Source: Blepharisma stoltei ATCC 30299 (taxonomy: Eukaryota; Protista; Ciliophora). From it: 64,000 nt of DNA. A program made the position numbers and the translations under genes. The notes beneath the pieces were generated by a model. The model worked only from the letters and a program-made list of their open reading frames with translations, had not been told where the DNA came from and made no database searches. The number at the start of each line of letters is the position of its first letter. Positions within the stretch are counted from its first letter, which is position 1. This document shows positions 12,724 to 27,143 of the stretch, piece after piece. Location of the stretch: NCBI GenBank assembly GCA_965603825.1, contig CBFDEM010000027.1:124001-188000 (forward strand), read 5' to 3'.

Positions 12724-14094
12724 ATGCCCAGAGAAATTATCACACTTCAAGTAGGACAATGTGGAAACCAAATAGGCATGGAATTTTGGAAGCAACTTTG
12801 TATGGAGCATGGGATTAATAATGAAGGCATACTAGAAGAATACGCAACTGCAGGCGATGACCGTAAAGATGTGTTCTTTTATCAAGCGGACGATGAACAC
12901 TATATTCCCCGCGCATTGCTTATCGATTTAGAGCCGAGGGTAATCCATACAATACAGACTTCTATGTATGCAGCCTTATATAACCCTGAAAATATTTATA
13001 TGAGCAGAGAAGGTGGGGGTGCAGGGAATAACTGGGCAAGTGGGTTTTCCCAAGCTGAAAGAGTCAATGATGAAATCATGGATATGATAGATAGAGAAGC
13101 TGATGGCAGCGACTCTTTAGAAGGGTTTGTGCTGCTTCATTCTATTGCAGGAGGCACTGGAAGTGGAATGGGGTCTTATTTATTAGAAAGACTTAATGAC
13201 AGATTTCCTAAGAAATTGATCCAAACTTATTCAGTTTTCCCAAACCAGCTTAGAACTTCTGACGTAGTTGTGCAGCCTTATAACTCATTATTGACTTTAA
13301 AAAGACTGACACTTAACGCTGATTGTGTAGTTGTGCTAGACAATGCGGCACTAAATCACATTGCAGTAGACAGACTAAAAATTCCAAACCCAACCTTTGC
13401 ACAGACTAATGCTTTAGTATCTACAGTTATGGCAGCTTCTACAACGACATTGAGATATCCTGGATATATGAATAATGATTTAGTAGGCCTCGTTGCTTCA
13501 CTTATCCCGACTCCTAGATGCCACTTTTTAATGACTGGCTATACTCCTTTAACTGTGGACCGACAAATCAGCTCAGTTCGGAAAACGACAGTTTTAGATG
13601 TAATGAGAAGGCTTTTGCAGACAAAAAATATTATGGTTTCGACTAATACAAAAAAGGGGGTTTATATGAGTATTTTAAATATCATTCAAGGAGATGTAGA
13701 TCCTACACAAGTTCACAAGTCACTACAGAGGATTAGGGAAAGAAAACTTGCAAATTTCATCCCTTGGGGGCCTGCGTCTATACAAGTTGCACTTTCAAGA
13801 AAATCACCGTATGTAGAAACTTCACATAAGGTGTCAGGACTTATGCTTGCGAACCATACGAGTATTGCGGATTTATTTGATAGGATTATTAGTCAGTATA
13901 CAAAATTGAGATCAAGGAATGCTTTTTTAGATAATTATAAAAAGGAAAGAATTTTTTCAGAAAATTTCGAAGAGTTTGATAGATCAGAAGAAATTGTAAA
14001 AGAGCTAATTCAAGAATATAAAGCTGCAGAAAAAGAAGATTATATAGACTGGGGAAATAATGCTGATTCTGATACAGATATTAGGATGAAATAA
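12724..14094 (+). CDS. TUBG1: Gamma-tubulin
   Basis: [57 protein letters not shown]. Confidence 0.98.
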
Positions 14095-14170
14095 ATTTAA
14101 GCAATTAATATATGATAACTTTTGAATTCAATTTAATAAGCCAATTAGATTAAAATTATTTGAAATTAAT

Positions 14171-15622
14171 TTAAGCTAAGCTTGCTATTATTTCCCAAGC
14201 TCTGTGTATATGTTCTTCTTCTAAATATTCACTATTCATGCTCAGTCTTATCACTGGTCTTCCTTCCAATTTAGTCCCTAAAACAAAAATATCTTTCCTT
14301 TCTTTCAGCTTGCCAATTAGTTCAGTTGTTTTTTGGTCATCTCCTTTCATTCTAAACACAAGCAGTGCGAACTCTCTCTTAGTACAAAATTCAAACCTAT
14401 CATCATTTTTTATGAGGTTTTCTAAAATTTTGGCTAGTTCTACGTGTTTTCTAATCATAGATTGAACGCCGCTGACACCGTACTGTGAAACATAAAAGAA
14501 CATTCTAAGGGCTCTATTATCTCTTCCAAAAGCTAACTGAAGAGATCCTAAATCAATGTCATCAGATTTCCTCAAATAGTCAGGATCCATTGTAAAACAG
14601 TCGCCAAGCCACTTTTTGTCTCTTATAAACATATAAGAAGCACAAAATCCTAACCCCATCCACTTCGAGGCGTTAACAACTATAGAGTCAGCATATTCAA
14701 CTCCTTTGAATAAATGTCTGAATTCTGGACAAACTAGTGCTGATCCAGCATAAGCTGCATCAATATGCAACCACATGTTATTTTCTTTACAAATTTGTCC
14801 GATTTGCTGAATTGGGTCAATTGCTGTGGAGTTTGTCGTTCCAAAAGTCCCACAAGCAAAAATTGGGTCAAGTCCTGCCTCTATATCTTTTTTGATTGCT
14901 AGAGGCAGCAAGCTTACATTCATAGGATAATTTTGAGAAATTTCATCAAAATAGCTAGGGATTACTCTGGTTTCATATCCCAAAGCTTTTGCGCACTTGC
15001 TTATGTGTACGTGTGTTTGATCAGAGACATAAATAACTGGTTTTTTGGCATTTCTTCTATGTCGCGCTACAATCAAGAGATTAAGAACTGAATCCCCAGC
15101 AGATGTCATAGCCATCCCTCCTCCAGGGCTTTTTTCATGCAAAAAGTAATCAGGGAATCCCATCATCTGTGCATACCAATCGGCACATAAGAGTTCCAAT
15201 TCGGTCTGCAGAGGAGAAGAATCCCATGAAAAGCCTATCGCGTTAATAGACCTAGATAAAATTTCTCCTTGGATAGCTGGCCAAGTTGATATTGAAGGAA
15301 ACCACGACATATACATTGGATGCTGCCAATGAGAGTTATTGGGTATAATGATGTCTTTTATTTGAGCTTGAATAGTTTCCCATCCCACAGGCTCAGCAGG
15401 AGGAGTTGAAGACACCAATTTCCTTAAAAAATTTCTTTTGGCGTCTGGCTTTACATTTATTGATGCAATATTTTTGTGGTACTCAGCTACCTGCTCTATC
15501 AGTTCATGAGTTTGATTTTTAAATTTGTCTATTCTCGCCTTGGAAATATCTGAAATATCGTTTGCGGTAGTAAAAGGCCTTCTAGTGAGATTACGTAAAT
15601 TCAACAACCTCATCTGCATCAT
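14171..15622 (-). CDS. Group II PLP-dependent aromatic L-amino acid decarboxylase (DDC/TDC/TyDC family)
   Basis: HWQHP, FSWDSSP-TELE, SDQTH, WLHIDAAYAG, PLP lysine in NASKW, loop DPDYL, QLAFGR..RAL. Confidence 0.92.
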   Translation of the reverse strand: MMQMRLLNLRNLTRRPFTTANDISDISKARIDKFKNQTHELIEQVAEYHKNIASINVKPDAKRNFLRKLVSSTPPAEPVGWETIQAQIKDIIIPNNSHWQHPMYMSWFPSISTWPAIQGEILSRSINAIGFSWDSSPLQTELELLCADWYAQMMGFPDYFLHEKSPGGGMAMTSAGDSVLNLLIVARHRRNAKKPVIYVSDQTHVHISKCAKALGYETRVIPSYFDEISQNYPMNVSLLPLAIKKDIEAGLDPIFACGTFGTTNSTAIDPIQQIGQICKENNMWLHIDAAYAGSALVCPEFRHLFKGVEYADSIVVNASKWMGLGFCASYMFIRDKKWLGDCFTMDPDYLRKSDDIDLGSLQLAFGRDNRALRMFFYVSQYGVSGVQSMIRKHVELAKILENLIKNDDRFEFCTKREFALLVFRMKGDDQKTTELIGKLKERKDIFVLGTKLEGRPVIRLSMNSEYLEEEHIHRAWEIIASLA

Positions 15623-15796
15623 TAATTATGAAAAATGGGGAATTTATTCTGGCATTGTGACATTTTGGGTATTGGGTATTCACGATGAGGTAATCTCGTT
15701 TTATCATAAAAATGATTATGCATGAAAAAAGGTAAAGAAATTAGGGACGAGATCAGAAAAATATTAGTAGTTAGATTATTAAAATATTCGTTAGTC

Positions 15797-16696
15797 TTAG
15801 CTTTCTACAGCTTCAAAGACGAACTTTTTCATTTCTGTGAGGCTATTAGCTTTAAATAAAAGCGGTTGGAAGTCGTGCAAAACGTAGTCCATATTCAGAA
15901 CCTTTTTGAGTTCTCAAGGCTCGACTTTACATTTTTTTTCACCGACATTAATTATTTCCCCACTCGAGGATAAAATCCCTGCTCCGAGAATTTTTTCACC
16001 AATAACGCCAAATTCTACTGAGTAGTAATAAATTTTAGCTAATTGGTCAATTTTTTCGTCACTAGCTCCAAGTGATTTCTTACCAATTTCTTGAGAAAAT
16101 TCGGCCATCTCCTCATTCGCAAAAAGTGGAACATGCCCCATTAGGTCGTGAACTACATCTGGTTCGACTGCGTAAAATGGGGAAGAAATATGCCTAATAT
16201 ACCTTGATGCAAAAAATACTCGATAAGCAAGTCCATATAAAAATGATCTTGCATTAATCATTCCTCCAACAGGAACTAGTTTGAATCCTGTTTTTGAGTT
16301 TAGCCAATTATTTACTTTAGAAAACTGAGGGACTTCATTTTCAGTGTAAATGTTTTTATTCTCCAACTCAATGAGGTTTTGGTTGTGTTCGTCACAAGCG
16401 TAAAGGCTATGAAGCTCTTTAAGCTTCCCATAAAGGATATTCCAAGTCTTATTTGCTTGCTCAGGATAATAAGCATCAGGGACGTCTGAATCGGCCGGGG
16501 TATCATAATTTCTCATTGATGAAAGCCAATTCATGTAATCGATGTCGTTTGAGCCTGGGTAGGAATTTCCAAGATCATCAATAATATTTCTATGAGACTT
16601 GTCAATACAGTCCAAATCTCGTCTTGATCTTGGATACCATATCGGTTTGGTGAATAATTGTTTTGTCTGATTAAGCAGCAAAGACTTCATAGCCAT
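15797..16696 (-). CDS. Biopterin-dependent aromatic amino acid hydroxylase (PAH/TPH family), catalytic domain only, 299 aa
   Basis: TGFKLVPVGG, YIRH..PFY..EPDVVHDLMGHVPLF, VEFG, GAGILSSSGE (2-His-1-Glu iron site). Read-through of TGA 15914-15916 gives DFQPLLF, matching the family C-terminus, then TAA 15797-15799. Confidence 0.93.
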
Positions 16697-18323
16697 TTTA
16701 ATTATGCGATTTCTGAAATTTTTCCAATTCTAGAATGCCATAATAGAAAACTTAAAGGCTAAAATTCTATAAATTAGTCTTCAGACACTTTTTGGATCAA
16801 TAGCTCTTATTCGGCCTAGTTAGAATTGCGAAAGCAGAAATAATCTAGAGAATTAAATTTTTTGTTTAAAAGTAATTTCATTTCATGATTTACTTATAAA
16901 AATGATGGCTACTTTGATAAATTTATAATATCTATTAAAGTAAAGGACATTAAAGCCTTTATCTTGATATTTAATGTGTAAATTTTAAATGGAAGAAGAA
17001 TCGAATTTGCTAATAAAAAAACTCTTAACATTTTTTTGAATGGGTCAGTAGATTAAGAGGCAATATTAAAGAGTATAAATAAGCAAGTCTCCTTAATTGT
17101 AATTTTTGCATATATAATTTAGTAGCCTATGATTATGAGCTACGTCACCATTTTTAAGTGATATATAATTTGTGATATATCTTTATGCTATGGAGTATCT
17201 ATAAATTCAATATCAAATTCTTTAACTATCTAAACTAAATTTTACCTAAGGATAAGAAGAAAAGCAAGCATTAAATACAATTTAATTTAAGGATTCTTAA
17301 TTTTAAAATGGCTTACAATAAATTCGAAATTGCAGTTAAAAATATATGTTTAAAAATTATTTTTATAGGCTTCTATTTTCTTGATAGCTATTTATGTTTT
17401 AATAAATATCAAGAATAGCTTATTTGAAAAATTAGATATAAAATGCATTTATTTGGCTGAAAACTTAAAAAGATTCTATTTTAATTTTTCTAAGTTCGAA
17501 GAAATGATATATGTGATGATAAATCAAATTAAGTCTTAATGTTTGATGCATAGGGTTTAAATTAAAGTAAAAGTGAAATATGATGAAAAAAATTAAAATG
17601 TTTTTTGAGTTATTTAATAGATTAGGTACTGGAATTATTAACGTGAAGCGAGTAAAGCTTAATCTTTTTATTTTTCATTAGAAAATTTATCTATTTTTAA
17701 TAGCCTATGTATATCATTTGCTTTCTCATTTTTTAAGAGTCTTAATTATATGTGACTAAATTTATCTGCTTAGGAAATAACTATAAATTTTTTAGGCTAT
17801 TTCAATTAAATTTAAAGCATAATATAATAAAATTCCATAATTAAAGAAAACAATCAAAAATTTTTGTATTTAAAATTATCCATATTTTTGTATATACTCG
17901 AAAATATAAAATTTCTTAGTGATAAAATGGCTTTATCAACTTTGAGAAATATAAGTTTCCTTAATATTATGATCTTTTACTGCTTTACCTAATTTCTGCA
18001 CTTAATAGCAATTATTCAATTATTTAATATAAAATAGATAATTCAGTTAAAGCTATTTAAGAATAATTATTAATTAATATCGAATTATTAAAGCTTTAAA
18101 CTTCATCTTTATATTCTCGCAAAAATTAATTTGGGACCGTTTTAAAAAATAATTAATTTCAGATCTTCCTAAAATAATCATTATTTTTACAATACATTAA
18201 TATTAACTTTTAAAAGAAGAATTTAAGACCCTGCTTAAAATTTTAAAAATCTATTAATTAAAAAAAACTATTAAAATCTAAATCCTGCCAATTATTACTG
18301 ATTTTTTTGATTTTTTATAATAT

Positions 18324-19943
18324 ATGATTAGAACCAGACCAAAATCTAGCATTTCATCATTAAATATTAACGAAGATAAACTCCGAAAACTCCAAAAGGA
18401 ATTTCTAAGAGGCCAAAACCGAATAAGGATTTCTTCTAAAAAAGTTTCAAAAAGTGAAAGACAAAGTCCAGTCACCTCAAACTCCACAAACCAGTTACCA
18501 AAACCTTACGAAGTCTTACAAAACTATTTAAAAAAGCGAAACACAGAAAACCAAGAGTTCAGTCCTTGCCACGAAGCCAATACCTCTCGTAAAGGCTTCA
18601 TCTCAACCCCAAAACTCCACACAAAACCTGCACATCGTCGAGTATTTTCTGACCACTTCCCAGTCAGTCCTAACATTCCAACTAAGCTAGAAGAAGCCGA
18701 AAAGCCAAGTTTTTTCCTCGATTTCTCCCAAAAAATCCCACCAAAAGTCGAGGTCAGAAAAAACTCATATTTTGATTTAAATTTAACCCCAAGAAAAAAA
18801 TCGCCATTAAACACCTCAAAACACAATTCCATAAATCTCTCAAGCTCCGAACTCCAAAACGAAGAAGAAAACAGAGAAAAACTCCTCCAATACATTTCCT
18901 CTTATTACAAAAAGCATTTAGAAGAGCCTACATCCTCTTTAGAGTTTTATCAAGTAGGCGAAATGATCGGTAAAGGCTCATTTGGAAGAGTTATGTTAGG
19001 CGTCCATAGACTGACAGGCCACAAAGTTGCCCTCAAAGCTATTGAAAAAATCCATATGAAAAACGAAGACTCCAGACGTAAAGTTTTACATGAAGTTTTA
19101 ATCCTGAAAAAAGTCCGCCATAGCCGAGTCAACCGAATTCTTGAGGTTTTTGAGTCCTCAAAATTTTTTTATATAGTTATGGAATACGCAGGAGGTGGCG
19201 ATCTTCTTCATTTTGTAAAAAGAAAAGGAAAAATCTTGGAAGGCGAAGCTAAAAGGATTTTCAGACAAATTCTTGAAGGGGCTATCGCAATTCATTCACA
19301 TGGGATTATTCATAGAGATTTTAAGCTTGATAACATTTTGATTGATTCTGATTATTCTTCAGTCAAAATTTGTGACTTTGGGGTAAGCAGGTCATTTAAA
19401 CGAGGAGACATGATATATGAACAATGTGGGACCCCTGCATATTTAGCTCCTGAAATGATTATAGGAAGAGGCTATGAAGGCCCTTCAGTCGATATCTGGA
19501 GTTTAGGCGTCCTTCTCTATGCAATGCTGTGTGGAACTGTCCCTTTTAAAGCTAAAAATCTGAATGATCTGCATAAAATGATTTTATTAGGAAAATATGC
19601 AATCCCAGAGTACATGTCAGATGAAGCTAAAGATTTAATTTCACTATTTTTAAACCCAATCCCACAATACCGCATTTCTTTAAAAGACGCATTAGAGCAC
19701 CGATGGTTTTTCACTGAAGATACAGAGCCAGAAGCTCCTCGGCCTCGATTTTCTGACCTGCAGACAGACCGTGATTTAGAAAAAATTGACGATTCTATAG
19801 TTTCTCAAGTCGCCAAGTTTGGCTACCCTAAGAGTTATATAATTAACTCCCTTAAAAACGGCGACCTCACACATTCCACCGCATCTTATTATATTTTGCA
19901 AGACCATGCATTAAAGCTACAAGCTTTAAACCCATGTGTATAA
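18324..19943 (+). CDS. CAMK-group (AMPK/MARK/SNF1-related) Ser/Thr kinase with UBA-like C-terminus
   Basis: IGKGSFG, VALK, HRDFKLDN, DFG, CGTPAYLAPE, DIWSLG; tail FGYPKSYIINSL...STASYYIL. Confidence 0.92.
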   Translation: MIRTRPKSSISSLNINEDKLRKLQKEFLRGQNRIRISSKKVSKSERQSPVTSNSTNQLPKPYEVLQNYLKKRNTENQEFSPCHEANTSRKGFISTPKLHTKPAHRRVFSDHFPVSPNIPTKLEEAEKPSFFLDFSQKIPPKVEVRKNSYFDLNLTPRKKSPLNTSKHNSINLSSSELQNEEENREKLLQYISSYYKKHLEEPTSSLEFYQVGEMIGKGSFGRVMLGVHRLTGHKVALKAIEKIHMKNEDSRRKVLHEVLILKKVRHSRVNRILEVFESSKFFYIVMEYAGGGDLLHFVKRKGKILEGEAKRIFRQILEGAIAIHSHGIIHRDFKLDNILIDSDYSSVKICDFGVSRSFKRGDMIYEQCGTPAYLAPEMIIGRGYEGPSVDIWSLGVLLYAMLCGTVPFKAKNLNDLHKMILLGKYAIPEYMSDEAKDLISLFLNPIPQYRISLKDALEHRWFFTEDTEPEAPRPRFSDLQTDRDLEKIDDSIVSQVAKFGYPKSYIINSLKNGDLTHSTASYYILQDHALKLQALNPCV

Positions 19944-22563: not shown

Positions 22564-23775
22564 TTAAAGGGATTCTATTAAGATAGAGGTGGCTCCGCCA
22601 CCTCCGTTGCAAATTCCAGCTAATCCTAAAGTTTTGCCTTTTTCTTGTAAAGAATAAAGAAGAGTACCCAAAATTCGAGCACCTGACATGCCTACTGGGT
22701 GGCCTAAAGCTACGGCTCCACCATTGATATTTACCTTTGCTAAGTCAATATCAAGAAGCTTTATGTTCGCCAATACAACTGAGCTGAATGCTTCATTTAT
22801 TTCAAACAAATCAATTCTTTCTTTAGATAACCCTGCGCGGGTTAAACATTTTTGCATCGCTTCTGCAGGCGCGATACTGAAATGAAGAGGTTCTGTTTCT
22901 GAGTCTGCAAAGCTTAATATCCTTGCTAAAGGCTTTAAGCCTAATTTATCAGCTTTTTCTTTACTCATTAGTAGCACAGCAGCTGCCCCATCATTAATAG
23001 ACGAAGCATTTGCAGCAGTTATCGTCCCTTTTTCACTAAAAACTGGTTTCAAGGTCGGGATTTTATCATATTTCACCTTTGTGTATTCTTCGTCATTTGA
23101 AATAATTTTTTGTCCTTTATTCCCTCCAACCACCACTTTTACAATTTCTTTATTATAAAACCCTCTATTTCAAGCTTTATTTGCTTTTGTATAAGACCTG
23201 ATACAAAATTTGTCTTGCTCTTCTCTTGTGATGCCAAATTTTTCAGCTGTTATTTCAGCACATGCACCCATAGAAAGTTTATTATAAGGACAGTTGAGCC
23301 CGTCTAAACTCATTAGGTCTTGTATAGAATTATCACTGTATTGGTGGCCTGTTCTGTATTTTTGTAGAATATAAGGGACAGAGCTCATACTTTCCATGCC
23401 TCCAGCAATTATTACGTCACTATGACCAAGTGCGATGTTTTGAACTGCTAATGTGACTGCTTTTAGCCCTGATGCACATAGCTTATTGACTCCTGTAGCA
23501 CAAGTTGTGTTGGGAAGCCCTGATAATATTGCAGCTTGTCTTGTAGAAGACTGCCCAGCACCTCCTTGGAATACATGTCCCATTATTACTTCTTGGACTT
23601 CTTTTTCACTTACTTTTGACTCTAGAAAGACAGATCTTATTGCAAAGGAGCCTAAAACTGGAGCTGGGAATGCAGAAAAGCAGCCCCCGAATGACCCGAT
23701 GGCTGTTCTTTTAGCTCCAACTATTACGACATCTCTTGGTAAAAATGAGAAATTCCTAACAAATTTTCCTAGCAT
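22564..23775 (-). CDS. Acetyl-CoA C-acetyltransferase (thiolase II, ACAT-like), probable mitochondrial copy, 403 aa
   Basis: NKLCASG, NEAF, GHPVG, CNGGG; TGA 23170-23172 aligns with TGG-Trp of the neighbouring paralog; short presequence-like MLGKFVRNF. Confidence 0.93.
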
Positions 23776-23778
23776 TTA

Positions 23779-24966
23779 TTAGTTAATCAATTCAATTATT
23801 ATTGAAGTCGCACCGCCACCTCCATTGCATATAGAAGCGCATCCAATCGTTTTATTGGATTCTCTGAGAGAATTGATAAGTGTTGCAATGATCCTGCAGC
23901 CTGACATTGCAAATGGGTGTCCAAGTGCAACTGCTCCTCCATTGATATTTAACTTATCATGGCTTATCCCAAGTAGTTTCATATTAACAATTGCAATCGA
24001 GCTGAAATTTTCATTGATTTCCCACAAGTCAACATTATTAACTGTCATTTTTGCCCTTTTCAGAGCCATTTGTATAGAAGGTGTAGGTGCAGTTCCAAAG
24101 TGCATAGGCTCAGTTTCTCCGTCAGCGAAGCTTACAATTCTAGCTAAAGGCTTTACTCCAAGCTTTCTAGCTGCGTCTATGCTCATAACTAAAGCAGTTG
24201 ACCCTCCATCATTAAACCCTGAGGCATTTGCAGCAGTAATAGTCCCATTTTTATCAAAAACAGGCTTAAGTGTAGGGATTTTGTCATATTTTACCTTTTT
24301 ATATTCGTCGTCTTCGGTTACCGTCACATTTCCTCCTTTTCCTTGGACTTCAATGGGGACGATTTCATTGTTAAAAAACCCTCTTTTCCATGCTTTTTCA
24401 GCTCTTCTATAAGACTCGGCGCAGAAACTGTCTTGCTCTTCTCTTGTGATGCCGTATTTTTCAATGGTTTTTTCTGAGCATAGTCCCATAGTTAATTTTG
24501 AATGTTTACAGTATACACCATCTGTGGAAAGGAGGTTAAAAATAGTGGAATCAGCGTAAAGATGTCCAGGACGGTAATCAGCGATATAGAAAGGGGCAAG
24601 ACTCATATTTTCTATACCTCCTGCCATTATGACATCTACGTGGCCTAGAGTGATGCTTTGAGCTGCTAATGTGACTGATTTCATGCCTGAGGAGCAAGCT
24701 TTATTAATACCTGTACAGATGGTTTCGTAAGGAAGCCCTGCATAGATAGAAGCTTGACGAGCCGGAGCTTGGCCTAGTCCTCCAAACATATTTCCAAGCA
24801 TTACTTCTTGGATATCAGATGGCTTTATATTGGCTTGCTGAATTGCTGCCTTGATACAGCTTGCACCAAGATTAACTGCTGGGATTTTGCTTAACGAGCC
24901 CATATAACTGCCTATTGGAGTTCTTTTAGCAGCAGCTATTATTACTTCTCTAGGCATAAAGCTCAT
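23779..24966 (-). CDS. Thiolase II paralog (start 24966, or upstream ATG at 25002)
   Basis: NKACSSG, NENF, GHPFA, CNGGG; aligns end to end with the downstream thiolase. Confidence 0.93.
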   Translation of the reverse strand: MSFMPREVIIAAAKRTPIGSYMGSLSKIPAVNLGASCIKAAIQQANIKPSDIQEVMLGNMFGGLGQAPARQASIYAGLPYETICTGINKACSSGMKSVTLAAQSITLGHVDVIMAGGIENMSLAPFYIADYRPGHLYADSTIFNLLSTDGVYCKHSKLTMGLCSEKTIEKYGITREEQDSFCAESYRRAEKAWKRGFFNNEIVPIEVQGKGGNVTVTEDDEYKKVKYDKIPTLKPVFDKNGTITAANASGFNDGGSTALVMSIDAARKLGVKPLARIVSFADGETEPMHFGTAPTPSIQMALKRAKMTVNNVDLWEINENFSSIAIVNMKLLGISHDKLNINGGAVALGHPFAMSGCRIIATLINSLRESNKTIGCASICNGGGGATSIIIELIN

Positions 24967-25092
24967 CTTATTAATTTCAATGAAAAATGCAATATATTCC
25001 ATTTATTTTATCCATCATTATCTATTTCTTTACAAATTAACAAAATAATCCACATAAAATACAATAATATACTAATTTTAGTATTATAAAAC

Positions 25093-25649: not shown

Positions 25650-26282
25650 TTAGCCTTTGTAATAATAACTACTTGGGACACGAGTTTCAAGGTAGGTTTT
25701 TAAAGACTGAGACGACTCAATTAATCTTGTCATCCATTGCTTTACTTTTGGAGCATTTAAGTCAAAAATGTCTGGGCTCTCTACTAGAATATAGTTATAC
25801 AAAAAGCTGAACACAAAAAAATCTGCATTTGTAGGGTGATCTCCTACAAAAAACCCTTGCCCAGCGTTATTTCTTTCTAATCTAGCTTCAATTTTTTGCA
25901 GCCAATCAGGAATCTTATCAGAAAACGTTTTTTTGAGGCCTTCTTCATCTTTAGTCCAGAAAAAATTCGCGATATACATTTGCATATCGTCTATTAAATC
26001 ACAGAGAGACTCTATCCAATATATATCTTGAGGATTTGAAGTATACAAATTGTATTTTTGGCACAAATACCTGACAATTGAGCGAGTTTGAGCTAATCGG
26101 AGACCATCAATATCGACTACTGGCAATTGGCCAAATTCAGCGAGCCCTGAAACTTTAACCTCTGGCCATTCAGAAAATTGGACTCTGTGGTCTGTAAAAG
26201 GAACACCAACATAGTGAAGGAGGATTCTAATTACTTCTGCTCTTCCGTATAGGTCGAAATAGTGCACCACTATGTCTGACAT
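25650..26282 (-). CDS. Glutathione S-transferase (sigma-like), copy 1
   Basis: YFDLYGRAEVIR, FGQLPV, QTRSIVRYL, FFVGD..ADF. Confidence 0.93.
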   Translation of the reverse strand: MSDIVVHYFDLYGRAEVIRILLHYVGVPFTDHRVQFSEWPEVKVSGLAEFGQLPVVDIDGLRLAQTRSIVRYLCQKYNLYTSNPQDIYWIESLCDLIDDMQMYIANFFWTKDEEGLKKTFSDKIPDWLQKIEARLERNNAGQGFFVGDHPTNADFFVFSFLYNYILVESPDIFDLNAPKVKQWMTRLIESSQSLKTYLETRVPSSYYYKG

Positions 26283-26522
26283 ACAGAAATTTATTATAAA
26301 AATTAATGGATATTTTTATTCGTAATCGCTCTTAATTTTGACCACTAGGAATATTTCGCTAATAATAGGCTGGACAAAGCATTTTCATTGCCTTTAAAAG
26401 TTAGATTAAGATATAAATAGTTTAGCAAATGCTGAAATGATGTGCTTAATTAACTCTAAATCCAGATATAAAGAAAAATTGGTTTTTAATTAAACTCTCC
26501 TCATTAAAATTAAGCTAATTAG

Positions 26523-27143
26523 TTAAAAGTCACGTTGAGGACGAGAATCAAGATAAGTCTTCAAGGTCTGAGAGGATTCAATTATTCTTGTCATCCATTG
26601 CTTTACCTTTGGAGCATACGAGTCAAAATACTCAGGATGAATTTTAATGATAAAAGTATGCAACAACCCAAATGCATAAAAATCTGCTTTTGTTGCGTGG
26701 TCTCCTACAAAAAACCCTTGCCCTCCGTTATTTCTTTCTAATCTTGCTTCAAGTTTTCTAAGCCAATCAGGCATTCTTTCTTCAAAAGCTTTATTGAGAC
26801 CTTCAAAATCTTTATTGTAAACAAATTTTCCCATATATGTTCCAATATCGTCTATTAAATCACAAAGACTCTCAACGTAATACACGTCTTGAATGCCTGA
26901 TACATAATAATTGTATTTTTGGCACAGGTAGCGAATAATCGACCTAGTTTGGACTAATCGATGACCATCAATGTCGACAGCTGGCAACTGACCGAATTCA
27001 GTGAATCCAGTAGCTTTTATTGCTGGCCATTCTTCGAATTGGATTCTGTGGTCTGTAAAAGGGATCCCAGCATAGTGAAGGATGAGTCTAATTGTTTCAG
27101 CTCTCCCGTAGATATCAAAATAGTGAACTACTATATCTGACAT
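26523..27143 (-). CDS. Glutathione S-transferase (sigma-like), copy 2
   Basis: Tandem paralog of 25650..26282 with the same motifs. Confidence 0.93.
   Translation of the reverse strand: MSDIVVHYFDIYGRAETIRLILHYAGIPFTDHRIQFEEWPAIKATGFTEFGQLPAVDIDGHRLVQTRSIIRYLCQKYNYYVSGIQDVYYVESLCDLIDDIGTYMGKFVYNKDFEGLNKAFEERMPDWLRKLEARLERNNGGQGFFVGDHATKADFYAFGLLHTFIIKIHPEYFDSYAPKVKQWMTRIIESSQTLKTYLDSRPQRDF

What the first reader, a model, noticed from the sequence alone, without database searches (positions are those of the whole stretch)
14171..16696. Adjacent aromatic amino acid hydroxylase + decarboxylase: candidate indoleamine (5-HTP/serotonin) or pheromone-linked mini-cluster in a ciliate
Seen: a pterin-dependent hydroxylase (15797..16696) lies 174 nt upstream of a group II PLP decarboxylase (14171..15622). 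They are on the same strand, in pathway order, and downstream of a long 1.6-kb non-coding region. Both have Arg/Lys-rich, acid-poor N-termini. Established: hydroxylase then AADC is the two-step route to serotonin or dopamine. PAH and TH carry Trp in YWFTVEFG whereas TPH has Phe; here it is Tyr (YYYSVEFG), and the loop reads PFY as in TPH1. The decarboxylase keeps the loop Tyr (DPDYL, decarboxylase rather than aldehyde synthase) and has Gly in QLAFGR, the residue linked to indole acceptance in plant TDC versus Ser in TyDC. Blepharisma gamone 2 (blepharismone) is a 5-hydroxylated tryptophan derivative. Inference: the pair may make 5-HTP and then serotonin or tryptamine, possibly in mitochondria, and may feed or compete with gamone 2 synthesis.
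Basis: partly seen in the sequence, partly recalled or inferred. Interest (0 to 1): 0.88.

Follow-up and report, generated by a model that had tools for sequence, protein, structure and literature searches.

The report
Linked hydroxylase–decarboxylase gene pair in Blepharisma
In the ciliate Blepharisma stoltei, the genome's only aromatic amino acid decarboxylase gene lies directly beside a stripped-down, tryptophan-hydroxylase-like hydroxylase gene; both are intact and transcribed, so the pair is a testable candidate two-step route to a monoamine such as serotonin, but no enzyme activity or co-regulation has been shown.

Summary
At 15797..16696(-) lies a 299-aa pterin-dependent aromatic amino acid hydroxylase (AAAH) with one in-frame TGA read as Trp. 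At 14171..15622(-), 174 nt downstream, lies a 483-aa group II PLP decarboxylase. The genome matches Blepharisma stoltei ATCC 30299.

- RNA-derived contigs from four runs cover both genes. They are two separate, intron-free mRNAs, and the 1.6-kb AT-rich spacer upstream has no coverage.
- The decarboxylase is the genome's only AADC-type gene. The hydroxylase is one of nine AAAH paralogs, so chance adjacency is about 7e-4.
- The hydroxylase belongs to a "short" clade: catalytic domain only, with no ACT domain and no tetramerisation arm, behind a basic, acid-free leader.
- Its sister paralog on another contig lies in a run of aminotransferase, IDO, ABC transporter and AAAH. The scan had already noted that run (s1-657687) as a candidate gamone 2 cluster.

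My best reading, at about 0.5, is a two-step module making an aromatic monoamine, most likely serotonin via 5-HTP. It would branch from gamone 2 synthesis, not feed it, because gamone 2 keeps its carboxyl group. Substrates, organelle targeting and co-regulation are untested. The linkage is absent in the only distant relatives available.

The parts
15797..16696 (-). Short (catalytic-domain-only) pterin-dependent aromatic amino acid hydroxylase. 299 aa, stop TAA at 15797-15799.
   Evidence: Pfam Biopterin_H E = 3e-75. Best solved relatives are Dictyostelium PAH 5jk5 (E = 4e-54), then PAH, TH and TPH almost equally. The 299-aa record is P0121. RNA contigs cover 15770-16680 with no joints.
15914..15916 (-). 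In-frame TGA read as Trp261 under the Blepharisma nuclear code.
   Evidence: TGA = Trp in B. stoltei (PMC9942806). The frame after it aligns with the last helices of the AAAH catalytic domain.
16643..16696 (-). 18-residue N-terminal leader of the hydroxylase (3 Lys, no acidic residue) ahead of the conserved WYPRS start of the catalytic domain. A possible organelle presequence.
   Evidence: Atlas structural matches begin at residues 2-15, mostly 12-15. All members of the short clade, including those from other organisms, have similar basic leaders. Targeting itself was not tested.
16013..16195 (-). Active-site block of the hydroxylase. Arg168 binds the substrate carboxylate. Tyr175-Ala176-Val177 form the loop. 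His183, His188 and Glu228 form the iron triad. Asp184 sits at the PAH Glu286 position. Tyr224 sits at the PAH Trp326 / TPH1 Phe313 position.
   Evidence: Alignment and coordinates. Residue roles: PMC12315947 and PMC2885594. Asp184, Ala176-Val177 and Tyr224 are unique to this paralog among 28 aligned AAAHs.
14171..15622 (-). AADC-type group II PLP decarboxylase, 483 aa, the only one in the genome. Key residues are Lys320 (PLP), His204, Asp288, Tyr349 (catalytic loop) and Phe365-Gly366 (substrate pocket).
   Evidence: Pfam Pyridoxal_deC E = 1e-95. Human AADC 3rbf scores E = 2e-96. Alignment. Residue coordinates. The only other PF00282 hits are two paralogous loci; the one examined (L011) is a sphingosine-1-phosphate lyase. 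RNA contigs cover 14145-15674 with no joints.
15539..15622 (-). About 28-residue N-terminal extension of the decarboxylase, lying before the conserved AADC fold. It has 4 Arg and no acidic residue in the first 20 residues. A possible organelle presequence.
   Evidence: The alignment with animal AADCs starts at residue ~29-32. Atlas structural matches to animal and bacterial AADCs start at residues 25-29. Composition. Targeting was not tested.
15623..15796 (-). 174-nt intergenic region. It holds the hydroxylase 3'UTR (at least 27 nt), a stretch of at most 95 nt with no RNA contig (15675-15769), and the decarboxylase 5' leader (at least 52 nt).
   Evidence: No RNA contig bridges the two genes in any of four runs. 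Sequence.
14145..14170 (-). Decarboxylase 3'UTR of 26 nt, ending at a poly(A) site.
   Evidence: Three contigs end at 14145, and one carries a loose run of 8 T before that position, which is the poly(A) tail of a minus-strand mRNA.
16697..18323 (.). 1627-nt AT-rich (21-29% GC) spacer between the hydroxylase and a divergently oriented protein kinase gene. It shows no transcription and its function is unknown.
   Evidence: Composition. No RNA contigs over 16743-18310. One 30-nt tandem repeat only. No Rfam match. Single copy in the genome.

Best explanation
The two genes form a functional two-step module that makes an aromatic monoamine.

- **Step 1.** The short hydroxylase has a catalytic domain only, so it is probably unregulated and not tetrameric. 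It would ring-hydroxylate an aromatic amino acid, most likely tryptophan to 5-hydroxytryptophan.
- **Step 2.** The neighbouring AADC-type enzyme, the only one in the genome, would decarboxylate the product, most likely to serotonin.
- **Location.** Both proteins carry basic, acid-free N-terminal leaders, so both steps may take place in the same organelle, plausibly the mitochondrion.
- **Transcription.** The genes are transcribed as separate monocistronic mRNAs.
- **Relation to gamone 2.** The sister hydroxylase on contig C58 lies beside an IDO, an aminotransferase and an ABC transporter, and is the better candidate for gamone 2 synthesis. The window pair would therefore be a side branch drawing on the same hydroxylated intermediate, not a step of pheromone synthesis.

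**Shown:** gene integrity, transcription, catalytic residues, uniqueness of the decarboxylase, paralog relationships and adjacency.
**Inferred:** substrates, product, targeting and functional coupling.
For: **Both enzymes look catalytically complete**
- Hydroxylase: the iron triad His183/His188/Glu228 and the carboxylate binders Arg168 and Ser244 are kept (roles in PMC2885594).
- Decarboxylase: Lys320, His204, Asp288 and the loop Tyr349 are kept. Tyr349 marks true decarboxylases as opposed to aldehyde synthases (bioRxiv 10.1101/404970).

**Both are transcribed**
- Both are present in all four RNA-like runs, with no introns, and the decarboxylase mRNA shows a poly(A) end.

**The adjacency is unlikely by chance**
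- The decarboxylase is the only AADC-type gene. The other PF00282 hits are two paralogous loci, and the one examined is a sphingosine-1-phosphate lyase.
- There are nine AAAH genes among 25,711 genes, so the chance that one is an immediate neighbour is about 7e-4 (gene count from PMC9942806).

**A second, independent linkage exists in the same subfamily**
- The window hydroxylase is sister (support 100/98) to the C58 pair.
- One member of that pair lies within 10 kb of an aminotransferase, an IDO and an ABC transporter.

**Pocket residues fit a larger substrate**
- Tyr224 replaces the bulky Trp that limits Trp turnover in PAH. All other short-clade members and the flatworm TPHs have Phe there, and PAH-like proteins have Trp (PMC12315947).
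- The decarboxylase has Phe365-Gly366. In plant enzymes Gly favours indolic substrates, and Phe occurs at the preceding site only in the TDC clade.

**Other support**
- Pterin recycling and synthesis genes (PCD, GTP cyclohydrolase I) are present.
- Both proteins have leader-like N-termini outside the conserved folds.
Against: - No enzyme activity, metabolite or localisation data exist.
- The two genes are separate transcripts with their own 5' ends.
- The contig depths available cannot test co-regulation.
- The closest decarboxylase relatives (45% and 40% identity, ciliate-like contigs) have no AAAH neighbour. Four short-AAAH loci from other organisms have no decarboxylase within the flanks held, up to 8 kb a side where the contig allowed.
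- Seven of the nine AAAH paralogs have no metabolic neighbour, so clustering is not a general rule in this genome.
- Neither enzyme is orthologous to a characterised TPH, TDC or DDC.
- Tyr224, Asp184 and Ala176-Val177 are unique to this paralog, which also has a longer branch (0.49 against 0.07-0.11 for its sisters). The substrate could therefore differ from that of its Phe-bearing sisters.
- Gly366 is equally compatible with L-DOPA, as in animal AADC.
Confidence: 0.5

Rival explanations
1. The adjacency is chance, in a very gene-dense genome. The hydroxylase is just one of five short paralogs, serving for example a 5-HTP supply or Phe/Tyr turnover. The decarboxylase works independently on free Trp, Tyr or Phe to make trace amines.
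For: - The transcripts are separate.
- No linkage is seen in any available relative.
- Seven of nine AAAH paralogs and four of five IDO loci have unrelated neighbours.
- No remnants of a shared ancestral cluster were found.
- There is a multiple-testing burden from a whole-genome scan.
Against: - The chance of this specific adjacency is about 7e-4.
- A second linkage to tryptophan-metabolising enzymes involves the sister paralog.
- Both proteins share the uncommon leader-like N-terminus, seen in only 3 of 34 other ORFs in the window.
Confidence: 0.3
2. The pair is coupled but makes a catecholamine or phenolic amine instead of an indoleamine: Tyr to L-DOPA to dopamine, or Phe to Tyr to tyramine. 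The product could serve signalling or the cross-linking and tanning of cyst or cortical material.
For: - Gly366 is the residue found in animal DOPA decarboxylases. The best solved match is human AADC/DDC.
- This paralog alone changed Phe to Tyr at the specificity position, and also changed the substrate loop (Ala176-Val177) and Asp184. That suggests a substrate different from that of its Phe-bearing sisters.
- From my own knowledge: Toxoplasma AAH enzymes make DOPA for wall material, and dopamine has been reported in Tetrahymena.
Against: - The TH-defining acidic residue at the PAH Val379 position is absent; it is Leu273 here.
- The residue is not the Trp found in TH and PAH.
- Phe365 before Gly366 is, among plant enzymes, seen only in the TDC clade.
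Confidence: 0.15
3. The pair is itself part of gamone 2 (blepharismone) biosynthesis.
For: - Gamone 2 is a 5-hydroxylated tryptophan derivative (PMC10892320; PMC9542385).
- The hydroxylase is the closest paralog of the one in the candidate gamone 2 run on C58.
Against: - Gamone 2 is 3-(2-formylamino-5-hydroxybenzoyl)lactate and keeps the carboxyl carbon, so decarboxylation is not on its route.
- The enzymes the route does need (IDO, aminotransferase) lie on C58 with a different hydroxylase.
- There are no IDO or aminotransferase traces in the window.
Confidence: 0.05

Closest known systems
Eukaryotic pterin-dependent aromatic amino acid hydroxylases (PAH, TH, TPH; Pfam PF00351), e.g. Dictyostelium PAH 5jk5 and human TPH1
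   Same: - Eukaryote-type catalytic domain: 42-44% identity to protist and flatworm enzymes, E = 1e-50 to 1e-54 against solved PAH, TH and TPH.
- The 2-His-1-Glu iron triad is kept.
- The Arg and Ser that hold the substrate carboxylate are kept.
- Predicted fold TM 0.90-0.93 to PAH, TH and TPH models.
   Different: - No ACT regulatory domain and no C-terminal dimerisation/tetramerisation arm. The protein ends at about PAH residue 405.
- A deletion of about 5-6 residues in the hairpin after VEFG.
- Tyr at the position that is Trp in PAH/TH and Phe in TPH.
- Asp in place of the pterin-site Glu.
- A basic N-terminal leader.
- It forms a separate short clade (100/100), not nested in animal TPH, TH or PAH.
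Bacterial monomeric phenylalanine hydroxylases (e.g. Chromobacterium violaceum PAH, 1ltu)
   Same: - Similar size (about 270-300 aa).
- Catalytic domain only, with no regulatory or tetramerisation domain.
   Different: Sequence is far closer to eukaryotic enzymes: E = 1e-25 against bacterial PAH, compared with 1e-54 against eukaryotic. The short form is therefore a secondary truncation of a eukaryote-type enzyme, not a bacterial-type gene.
Aromatic L-amino acid decarboxylase / DOPA decarboxylase (human 3rbf, pig 1js3) and plant TDC/TyDC (6eew, 6eem)
   Same: - 35-38% identity over the full length.
- PLP Lys, stacking His, Asp and catalytic-loop Tyr are kept.
- Gly at the CrTDC-370 / human-354 position.
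   Different: - It belongs to a separate clade with two ciliate-like sequences (100/100), outside the animal, plant/fungal and bacterial clades.
- The catalytic loop is shorter by about 5-7 residues.
- Leu replaces the nearly invariant Trp of the WQI motif, and RDNRA replaces RRFRS.
- A basic N-terminal extension of about 28 residues.
Candidate gamone 2 gene run on contig C58 of the same genome (earlier scan note s1-657687)
   Same: It is built around the sister short hydroxylase (62-65% identity). That hydroxylase is physically linked to enzymes that act on the hydroxylated tryptophan skeleton.
   Different: - The downstream enzymes there are an IDO and an aminotransferase, plus an ABC transporter. 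Here the downstream enzyme is a decarboxylase.
- The hydroxylase there has the TPH-type Phe. Here it is Tyr.

Membership tests
Pterin-dependent aromatic amino acid hydroxylase (PF00351) | Biopterin_H catalytic domain | tested here: met
   Pfam E = 3e-75, profile positions 1-245 in the piece before the TGA. Six-frame match to positions 2-282 of 331. Atlas model TM 0.90-0.93 to PAH, TH and TPH.
Pterin-dependent aromatic amino acid hydroxylase (PF00351) | 2-His-1-carboxylate iron triad, plus the Arg and Ser that bind the substrate carboxylate | tested here: met
   His183, His188, Glu228, Arg168 and Ser244 align with PAH His285, His290, Glu330, Arg270 and Ser349. Roles are from PMC2885594.
Pterin-dependent aromatic amino acid hydroxylase (PF00351) | Eukaryotic architecture: N-terminal ACT regulatory domain and C-terminal tetramerisation arm | tested here: not met
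   There is no ACT hit. The protein starts 18 residues before the catalytic domain and ends before the RPF..RY segment that all long homologs carry. Four long paralogs of the same genome do carry the N-terminal segment that aligns with the ACT region of ACT-annotated homologs.
Tryptophan hydroxylase (TPH) subfamily | Phe at human TPH1 position 313 (Trp in PAH and TH) | tested here: not met
   The residue is Tyr224, neither Phe nor Trp. The eleven other short-clade proteins and the flatworm TPHs have Phe.
Tryptophan hydroxylase (TPH) subfamily | Orthology with animal TPH | tested here: not met
   In the tree the short clade is separate (100/100) from the clade that holds the flatworm TPHs and the long protist enzymes.
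Tryptophan hydroxylase (TPH) subfamily | Tryptophan 5-hydroxylation activity | not testable with these tools
   This needs an enzyme assay.
Aromatic L-amino acid decarboxylase (group II PLP decarboxylase, PF00282) | Pyridoxal_deC domain with the PLP Lys, stacking His and Asp | tested here: met
   Pfam E = 1e-95. Lys320, His204 and Asp288 fall in invariant or nearly invariant columns.
Aromatic L-amino acid decarboxylase (group II PLP decarboxylase, PF00282) | Catalytic-loop Tyr (decarboxylase) as opposed to Phe (aldehyde synthase) | tested here: met
   Tyr349 lies in DPDYL. The Rhodiola and Ziziphus aldehyde synthases have Phe in the same column. The rule is from bioRxiv 10.1101/404970.
Aromatic L-amino acid decarboxylase (group II PLP decarboxylase, PF00282) | Indole-accepting pocket (Gly at CrTDC 370) | tested here: inconclusive
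   Gly366 is present. Animal AADCs that prefer L-DOPA also have Gly, and the protein lies outside all characterised clades.
Eukaryotic metabolic gene cluster | Physical adjacency of consecutive pathway genes beyond chance | tested here: met
   The genes are immediate neighbours 174 nt apart. The odds are about 7e-4 for the single AADC gene against nine AAAH genes.
Eukaryotic metabolic gene cluster | Co-regulation of the members | tested here: inconclusive
   Both genes are present in all four RNA-like runs, but only as contigs whose depths cannot rank genes. They are separate mRNAs.
Eukaryotic metabolic gene cluster | Conservation of the linkage in related species | tested here: not met
   There is no AAAH beside the two nearest decarboxylase relatives. 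There is no decarboxylase beside four short-AAAH loci from other organisms. All of these are distant (40-54% identity). No other Blepharisma genome was available.
Mitochondrially targeted protein | N-terminal presequence: an extension outside the conserved fold, basic and free of acidic residues | tested here: met
   Extensions of 18 and about 28 residues. Composition.
Mitochondrially targeted protein | Predicted or observed import and cleavage | not testable with these tools
   No targeting predictor or proteome was available.

The most novel reading that the evidence does not exclude
Blepharisma arranges its tryptophan-derived signalling chemistry in physically linked gene modules. Each is built around one of two sister hydroxylases that are catalytic-domain-only, organelle-targeted and TPH-like.

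- The module on contig C58 (hydroxylase, IDO, aminotransferase, ABC exporter) would make the mating pheromone gamone 2.
- The module in this window (hydroxylase, then the genome's only AADC) would make serotonin or a related indoleamine from the same 5-hydroxytryptophan intermediate.

This would give the cell a genetically hard-wired branch point between pheromone and monoamine. It would also be, as far as I know, an early example of metabolic gene clustering in a ciliate.
Probability: 0.25. Interest if true: 0.8.

Novelty: new variant of a known kind. Interest (0 to 1): 0.55.

Why it matters
- **Monoamines in ciliates.** Serotonin and catecholamines have long been reported in ciliates, but the genes behind them have not been pinned down. 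This locus gives one specific, expressed gene pair to test, and it includes the only AADC-type gene in the genome.
- **Gamone 2.** The biosynthesis of the Blepharisma pheromone gamone 2 is still unresolved at the hydroxylation step. My full-text searches found no paper linking Blepharisma to a tryptophan hydroxylase. The window hydroxylase is the closest paralog of the one beside an IDO and an aminotransferase. The two loci can therefore be tested together as a branch point (5-HTP to pheromone, or 5-HTP to amine).
- **Enzyme evolution.** The short clade is a eukaryote-type AAAH that lost both its regulatory and its oligomerisation domains and carries a leader peptide. It is a natural minimal enzyme, of interest for enzymology and for the evolution of substrate specificity. 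The series runs Trp, Phe, Tyr at one pocket position across the nine paralogs of one genome.
- **If the coupling fails.** The locus is then simply two ordinary enzyme genes that happen to be neighbours.

Tried and rejected
1. **Closer decarboxylase orthologs cut by TGA codons.** A search with the N-terminal half (250 aa) found nothing at E <= 1e-20. No close relative is on record, so synteny in a near species could not be tested.
2. **Linkage in relatives.** None was found. The contigs for P0003 gave gene tables only, with no DNA.
3. **Remnants near the other paralogs.** I looked for traces of a decarboxylase, IDO or aminotransferase next to the other short paralogs and in the window. There were none.
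4. **Metabolic neighbours elsewhere.** The other seven AAAH paralogs and the other IDO loci have none. Their neighbours are a channel, DNA polymerase delta, Ras, DHHC, TRAF, kinesin, PX, RING and RCC1 proteins.
5. **The 1.6-kb spacer.** I tested it as a hidden gene, RNA or repeat. There were no RNA contigs, no Rfam match, no second copy in the genome and essentially no tandem repeats (one 30-nt array).
6. **Citrate synthase N-termini as a local reference for mitochondrial leaders.** The four best copies have acidic N-termini and were not useful.
7. **'PFY' loop as a TPH marker.** Rejected, because the PAH-like long paralogs carry it too.
8. **Horizontal transfer from bacteria.** Not supported. 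The hydroxylase is eukaryote-type, and the decarboxylase groups with ciliate-like sequences, not inside the bacterial clade.
9. **Reversed order (decarboxylase first, hydroxylase acting on the amine).** Considered because Thr278 is replaced by Ala. Rejected as the leading idea for two reasons: that Thr binds through backbone atoms, and the carboxylate-binding Arg and Ser are kept.

**Technical notes**
- Proteins that read through TGA could not be sent by reference. The hydroxylase was therefore searched as two pieces (260 aa and 38 aa) or through the database's own record P0121.
- Whole-length translations under the ciliate code were made only inside scripts.
- No spliced model was needed.


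Full report
**What is there**

The window is G000:C27:124001-188000 of a 41.46-Mb, 64-contig assembly. Assembly size, contig count, TGA read as Trp and tiny or absent introns all match the Blepharisma stoltei ATCC 30299 somatic genome (PMC9942806). That strain is mating type I, which secretes gamone 1.

Two genes lie head-to-tail on the minus strand:
- **Hydroxylase, 15797..16696.** Table 11 gives a 260-aa ORF. It continues through a single TGA at 15914-15916 to a TAA at 15797-15799, giving 299 aa. The public protein collection already holds this 299-aa product (P0121). Pfam Biopterin_H scores E = 3e-75.
- **Decarboxylase, 14171..15622.** It encodes 483 aa with no internal TGA. Pfam Pyridoxal_deC scores E = 1e-95.

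The gap between them is 174 nt. Upstream of the hydroxylase is a 1627-nt spacer at 21-29% GC, followed by a divergent protein kinase gene. Downstream of the decarboxylase is a convergent gamma-tubulin-like gene.

**Are the genes real and expressed?**

I laid four public runs from one study on 13000-18900. They are kept as assembled contigs, and they behave as RNA:
- The contigs stop at gene borders.
- None lies on 16743-18310.
- One contig carries a loose run of eight T before 14145. This is the poly(A) tail of a minus-strand mRNA ending 26 nt after the decarboxylase stop codon.

The decarboxylase contigs span 14145-15674 and the hydroxylase contigs span 15770-16680. There are no joints, so there are no introns. 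No contig bridges 15675-15769 in any run. So these are two separate, intact, transcribed genes and not one transcription unit.

Two limits apply. The hydroxylase contigs stop 16 nt inside the ORF, and contig ends cannot define a transcript start. All paralogs conserve the WYPRS segment that follows the first ATG, so I keep that ATG. Contig depths cannot rank genes, so co-regulation is untested.

**The hydroxylase**

It is a eukaryote-type enzyme. The best solved match is Dictyostelium PAH (E = 4e-54). Mammalian PAH, TH and TPH follow almost equally (1e-52 to 1e-49), and bacterial PAHs reach only 1e-25.

It consists of the catalytic domain alone:
- 18 residues precede the conserved start of the domain.
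- The chain ends at about PAH residue 405, before the segment that leads into the dimerisation and tetramerisation arm.

The genome has nine AAAH genes, all single ORFs under the ciliate code. Four are long (414-420 aa) with an N-terminal segment that aligns with the ACT region of ACT-annotated homologs. Five are short (299-323 aa).

In a maximum-likelihood tree the short proteins, together with similar sequences from other ciliate-like contigs and transcriptomes, form one clade (100/100). That clade is separate from the long protist enzymes and the flatworm TPHs. The window protein is sister (100/98) to a pair of 86%-identical paralogs on contig C58.

Residues that are kept (roles from PMC2885594):
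- the iron triad His183, His188 and Glu228
- Arg168 and Ser244, which hold the substrate carboxylate

At the pocket position where PAH has a bulky Trp that hinders tryptophan turnover and TPH has Phe (PMC12315947), the nine paralogs form a series:

| Paralogs | Residue at the PAH Trp326 position |
|---|---|
| Two long paralogs (PAH-like) | Trp |
| Other two long paralogs | Phe |
| Four short paralogs (and all foreign short-clade members) | Phe |
| Window protein | Tyr224 |

The window protein is also alone in having Asp184 for the pterin-site Glu and Ala176-Val177 for Thr-Pro in the substrate loop. Its branch is longer than those of its sisters (0.49 against 0.07-0.11).

The TH-type Asp at the PAH Val379 position is absent; the residue is Leu273.

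In summary, this is a competent amino acid hydroxylase with a pocket not of the PAH type. Its specificity cannot be read from sequence.

**The decarboxylase**

It is 35-38% identical to animal AADC and HDC and to plant TyDC, TDC and aldehyde synthases. Human AADC is the best solved match (E = 2e-96).

- Lys320, His204 and Asp288 are in place.
- The catalytic-loop residue is Tyr349. Two plant aldehyde synthases in the same alignment have Phe there (rule in bioRxiv 10.1101/404970). The enzyme should therefore release an amine and not an aldehyde.
- At the plant selectivity site it has Gly366, which is the indole-favouring state in C. roseus TDC. Gly366 is preceded by Phe365, a residue seen at that site only in the plant TDC clade.
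- Animal DOPA decarboxylases also have Gly. Gly therefore permits indoles without selecting them.

The protein groups (100/100) with two ciliate-like sequences on long branches, outside the animal, plant/fungal and bacterial clades. The plant and animal residue rules are therefore analogies.

It is the only AADC-type gene in the genome. The other two PF00282 matches are paralogous loci, and the one I examined is a sphingosine-1-phosphate lyase (E = 1e-126 to the human enzyme).

**N-termini**

The decarboxylase has about 28 residues before the point where animal AADCs begin. Atlas structural matches to animal and bacterial AADCs start at residues 25-29. The hydroxylase has 18 residues before its domain (Atlas matches start at residues 2-15).

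Both leaders are basic and lack acidic residues. Only 3 of 34 other large ORFs in the window share that property. All short-clade hydroxylases have similar leaders, including those from other organisms, and so do the four long paralogs and the IDO paralogs. This fits a mitochondrial-type presequence. I had no predictor or localisation data, so targeting remains an inference.

**Is the linkage meaningful?**

For:
- With one AADC gene, nine AAAH genes and 25,711 genes in total, the chance that an AAAH is an immediate neighbour is about 7e-4.
- A second linkage exists in the same subfamily. On contig C58 the sister short hydroxylase (340032-340964) lies in a run with a class I/II aminotransferase (330994-332211, Pfam E = 7e-55), an IDO (332289-333425, E = 1e-58), a full ABC transporter (333810-337616) and an unknown membrane-like ORF.
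- That is the enzyme set expected for turning tryptophan into gamone 2: 5-hydroxylation, indole ring opening and replacement of the amino group, followed by export.
- The scan's first stage had already noted exactly this 9971-letter stretch (s1-657687). I reached it independently and confirmed the family assignments.
- Pterin recycling and synthesis genes are present.

Against:
- The other three short paralogs, the four long ones and the other IDO loci have unrelated neighbours.
- No traces of a decarboxylase, IDO or aminotransferase lie near the other paralogs or in the window.
- The nearest decarboxylase relatives (45% and 40% identity) have no AAAH neighbour.
- Four foreign short-AAAH loci have no decarboxylase within the flanks held, up to 8 kb a side where the contig allowed.
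- These relatives are distant, and no other Blepharisma genome was available. A search for TGA-truncated fragments of closer orthologs found nothing.

**Interpretation**

The most likely reading, at about 0.5, is a functional two-step route to an aromatic monoamine. Serotonin via 5-HTP is the leading guess for three reasons:
- the hydroxylase's subfamily has a TPH-like pocket
- its sister sits in a tryptophan-processing run
- the decarboxylase has a Phe-Gly pocket pair

The unique Tyr224, Asp184 and Ala-Val substitutions leave room for a different substrate, such as Tyr to DOPA to dopamine (about 0.15). Pure chance adjacency stands at about 0.3.

The pair is not part of gamone 2 synthesis itself. 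Gamone 2 is 3-(2-formylamino-5-hydroxybenzoyl)lactate and keeps its carboxyl group (PMC10892320). At most the pair competes for 5-HTP. A 2017 paper on a B. stoltei IDO involved in pheromone synthesis exists (cited in PMC9942856), but I could not read it. From memory it reports an IDO with a preference for 5-HTP.

My full-text searches found no paper linking Blepharisma to a tryptophan hydroxylase. They also found nothing describing an AAAH-decarboxylase pair in ciliates.

**Verdict**

Both enzymes belong to known families. The hydroxylase is a structural variant: a eukaryote-type catalytic domain only, with a leader and a Tyr in the pocket. The gene arrangement is unusual for a ciliate. Function is unproven but directly testable. 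Interest is moderate at 0.55.

**Technical note**

Proteins that read through TGA were searched in pieces or through the database's own record. Whole-length translations were made only in scripts.

Noticed in passing
G000 contig C58:330994-340964 (loci L026:4995-10000 and L030:1-4965): A run of five ORFs: a class I/II aminotransferase (+), an IDO (-), a full ABC transporter (-), an unknown 377-aa membrane-like ORF (-) and a short AAAH with the TPH-type Phe (-). This is the enzyme set expected for gamone 2 (blepharismone) synthesis from tryptophan. It is the same stretch as earlier scan note s1-657687. No candidate keto-acid reductase was identified: the flanking 238-aa ORF and both parts of the 377-aa ORF have no Pfam match.
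   Followed up: partly
Loci L001-L009 (nine AAAH paralogs of G000): Three paralog pairs are 84-86% identical (C37/C28, C36/C57, C58a/C58b), which suggests a large-scale duplication. The window paralog, the C15 paralog and the C5 paralog have no such partner. The pocket residue at the PAH Trp326 position runs Trp (2 genes), Phe (6 genes), Tyr (1 gene) within one genome.
   Followed up: partly
L003 and L004 (C36:309685-310626, C57:477268-478194): Two long AAAHs (with the N-terminal ACT-like segment) have the TPH-type Phe, an Arg at the PAH Val379 / TH Asp425 position, and IEIG instead of VEFG. They are very divergent (branch length 1.33). Other first-stage notes also flagged them (s1-673501, s1-664966).
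   Followed up: partly
window 15623-15674 (minus strand): In one run the decarboxylase 5' leader reaches 52 nt upstream of the ATG. It contains a 13-codon upstream ORF (ATG at 15663) whose TAA stop overlaps the main ATG (TAATG). A second, 3-codon uORF is also present. This may indicate translational control, or it may be incidental.
   Followed up: no
window 16697-18323: A 1.6-kb, 21-29% GC spacer that is single-copy and essentially repeat-free, with no RNA contigs and no Rfam match. It is unusually long for this gene-dense genome and its function is unknown.
   Followed up: partly
window 18551-18851 (protein kinase gene 18324..19943 +): Run X2 alone carries a second set of contigs with 7 substitutions in the kinase gene. 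This fits a second strain or allele in that sample, for example a mixture of the two mating strains. No such variant contigs were seen over the hydroxylase or the decarboxylase.
   Followed up: no
L019:5482-8711 (Logan contig of SRR24908292): A foreign short AAAH (54% identical to the window protein, 61% to the C15 paralog) has a divergently oriented TRAF-type zinc finger gene upstream. The C15 paralog of B. stoltei has the same arrangement. This points to conserved synteny for that paralog in another ciliate.
   Followed up: partly
window 22564-25002 and 25650-27143: Two tandem pairs of similar ORFs (403 + 407 aa and 210 + 206 aa). The first ORF of the first pair has a leader-like N-terminus. 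I did not identify their families.
   Followed up: no
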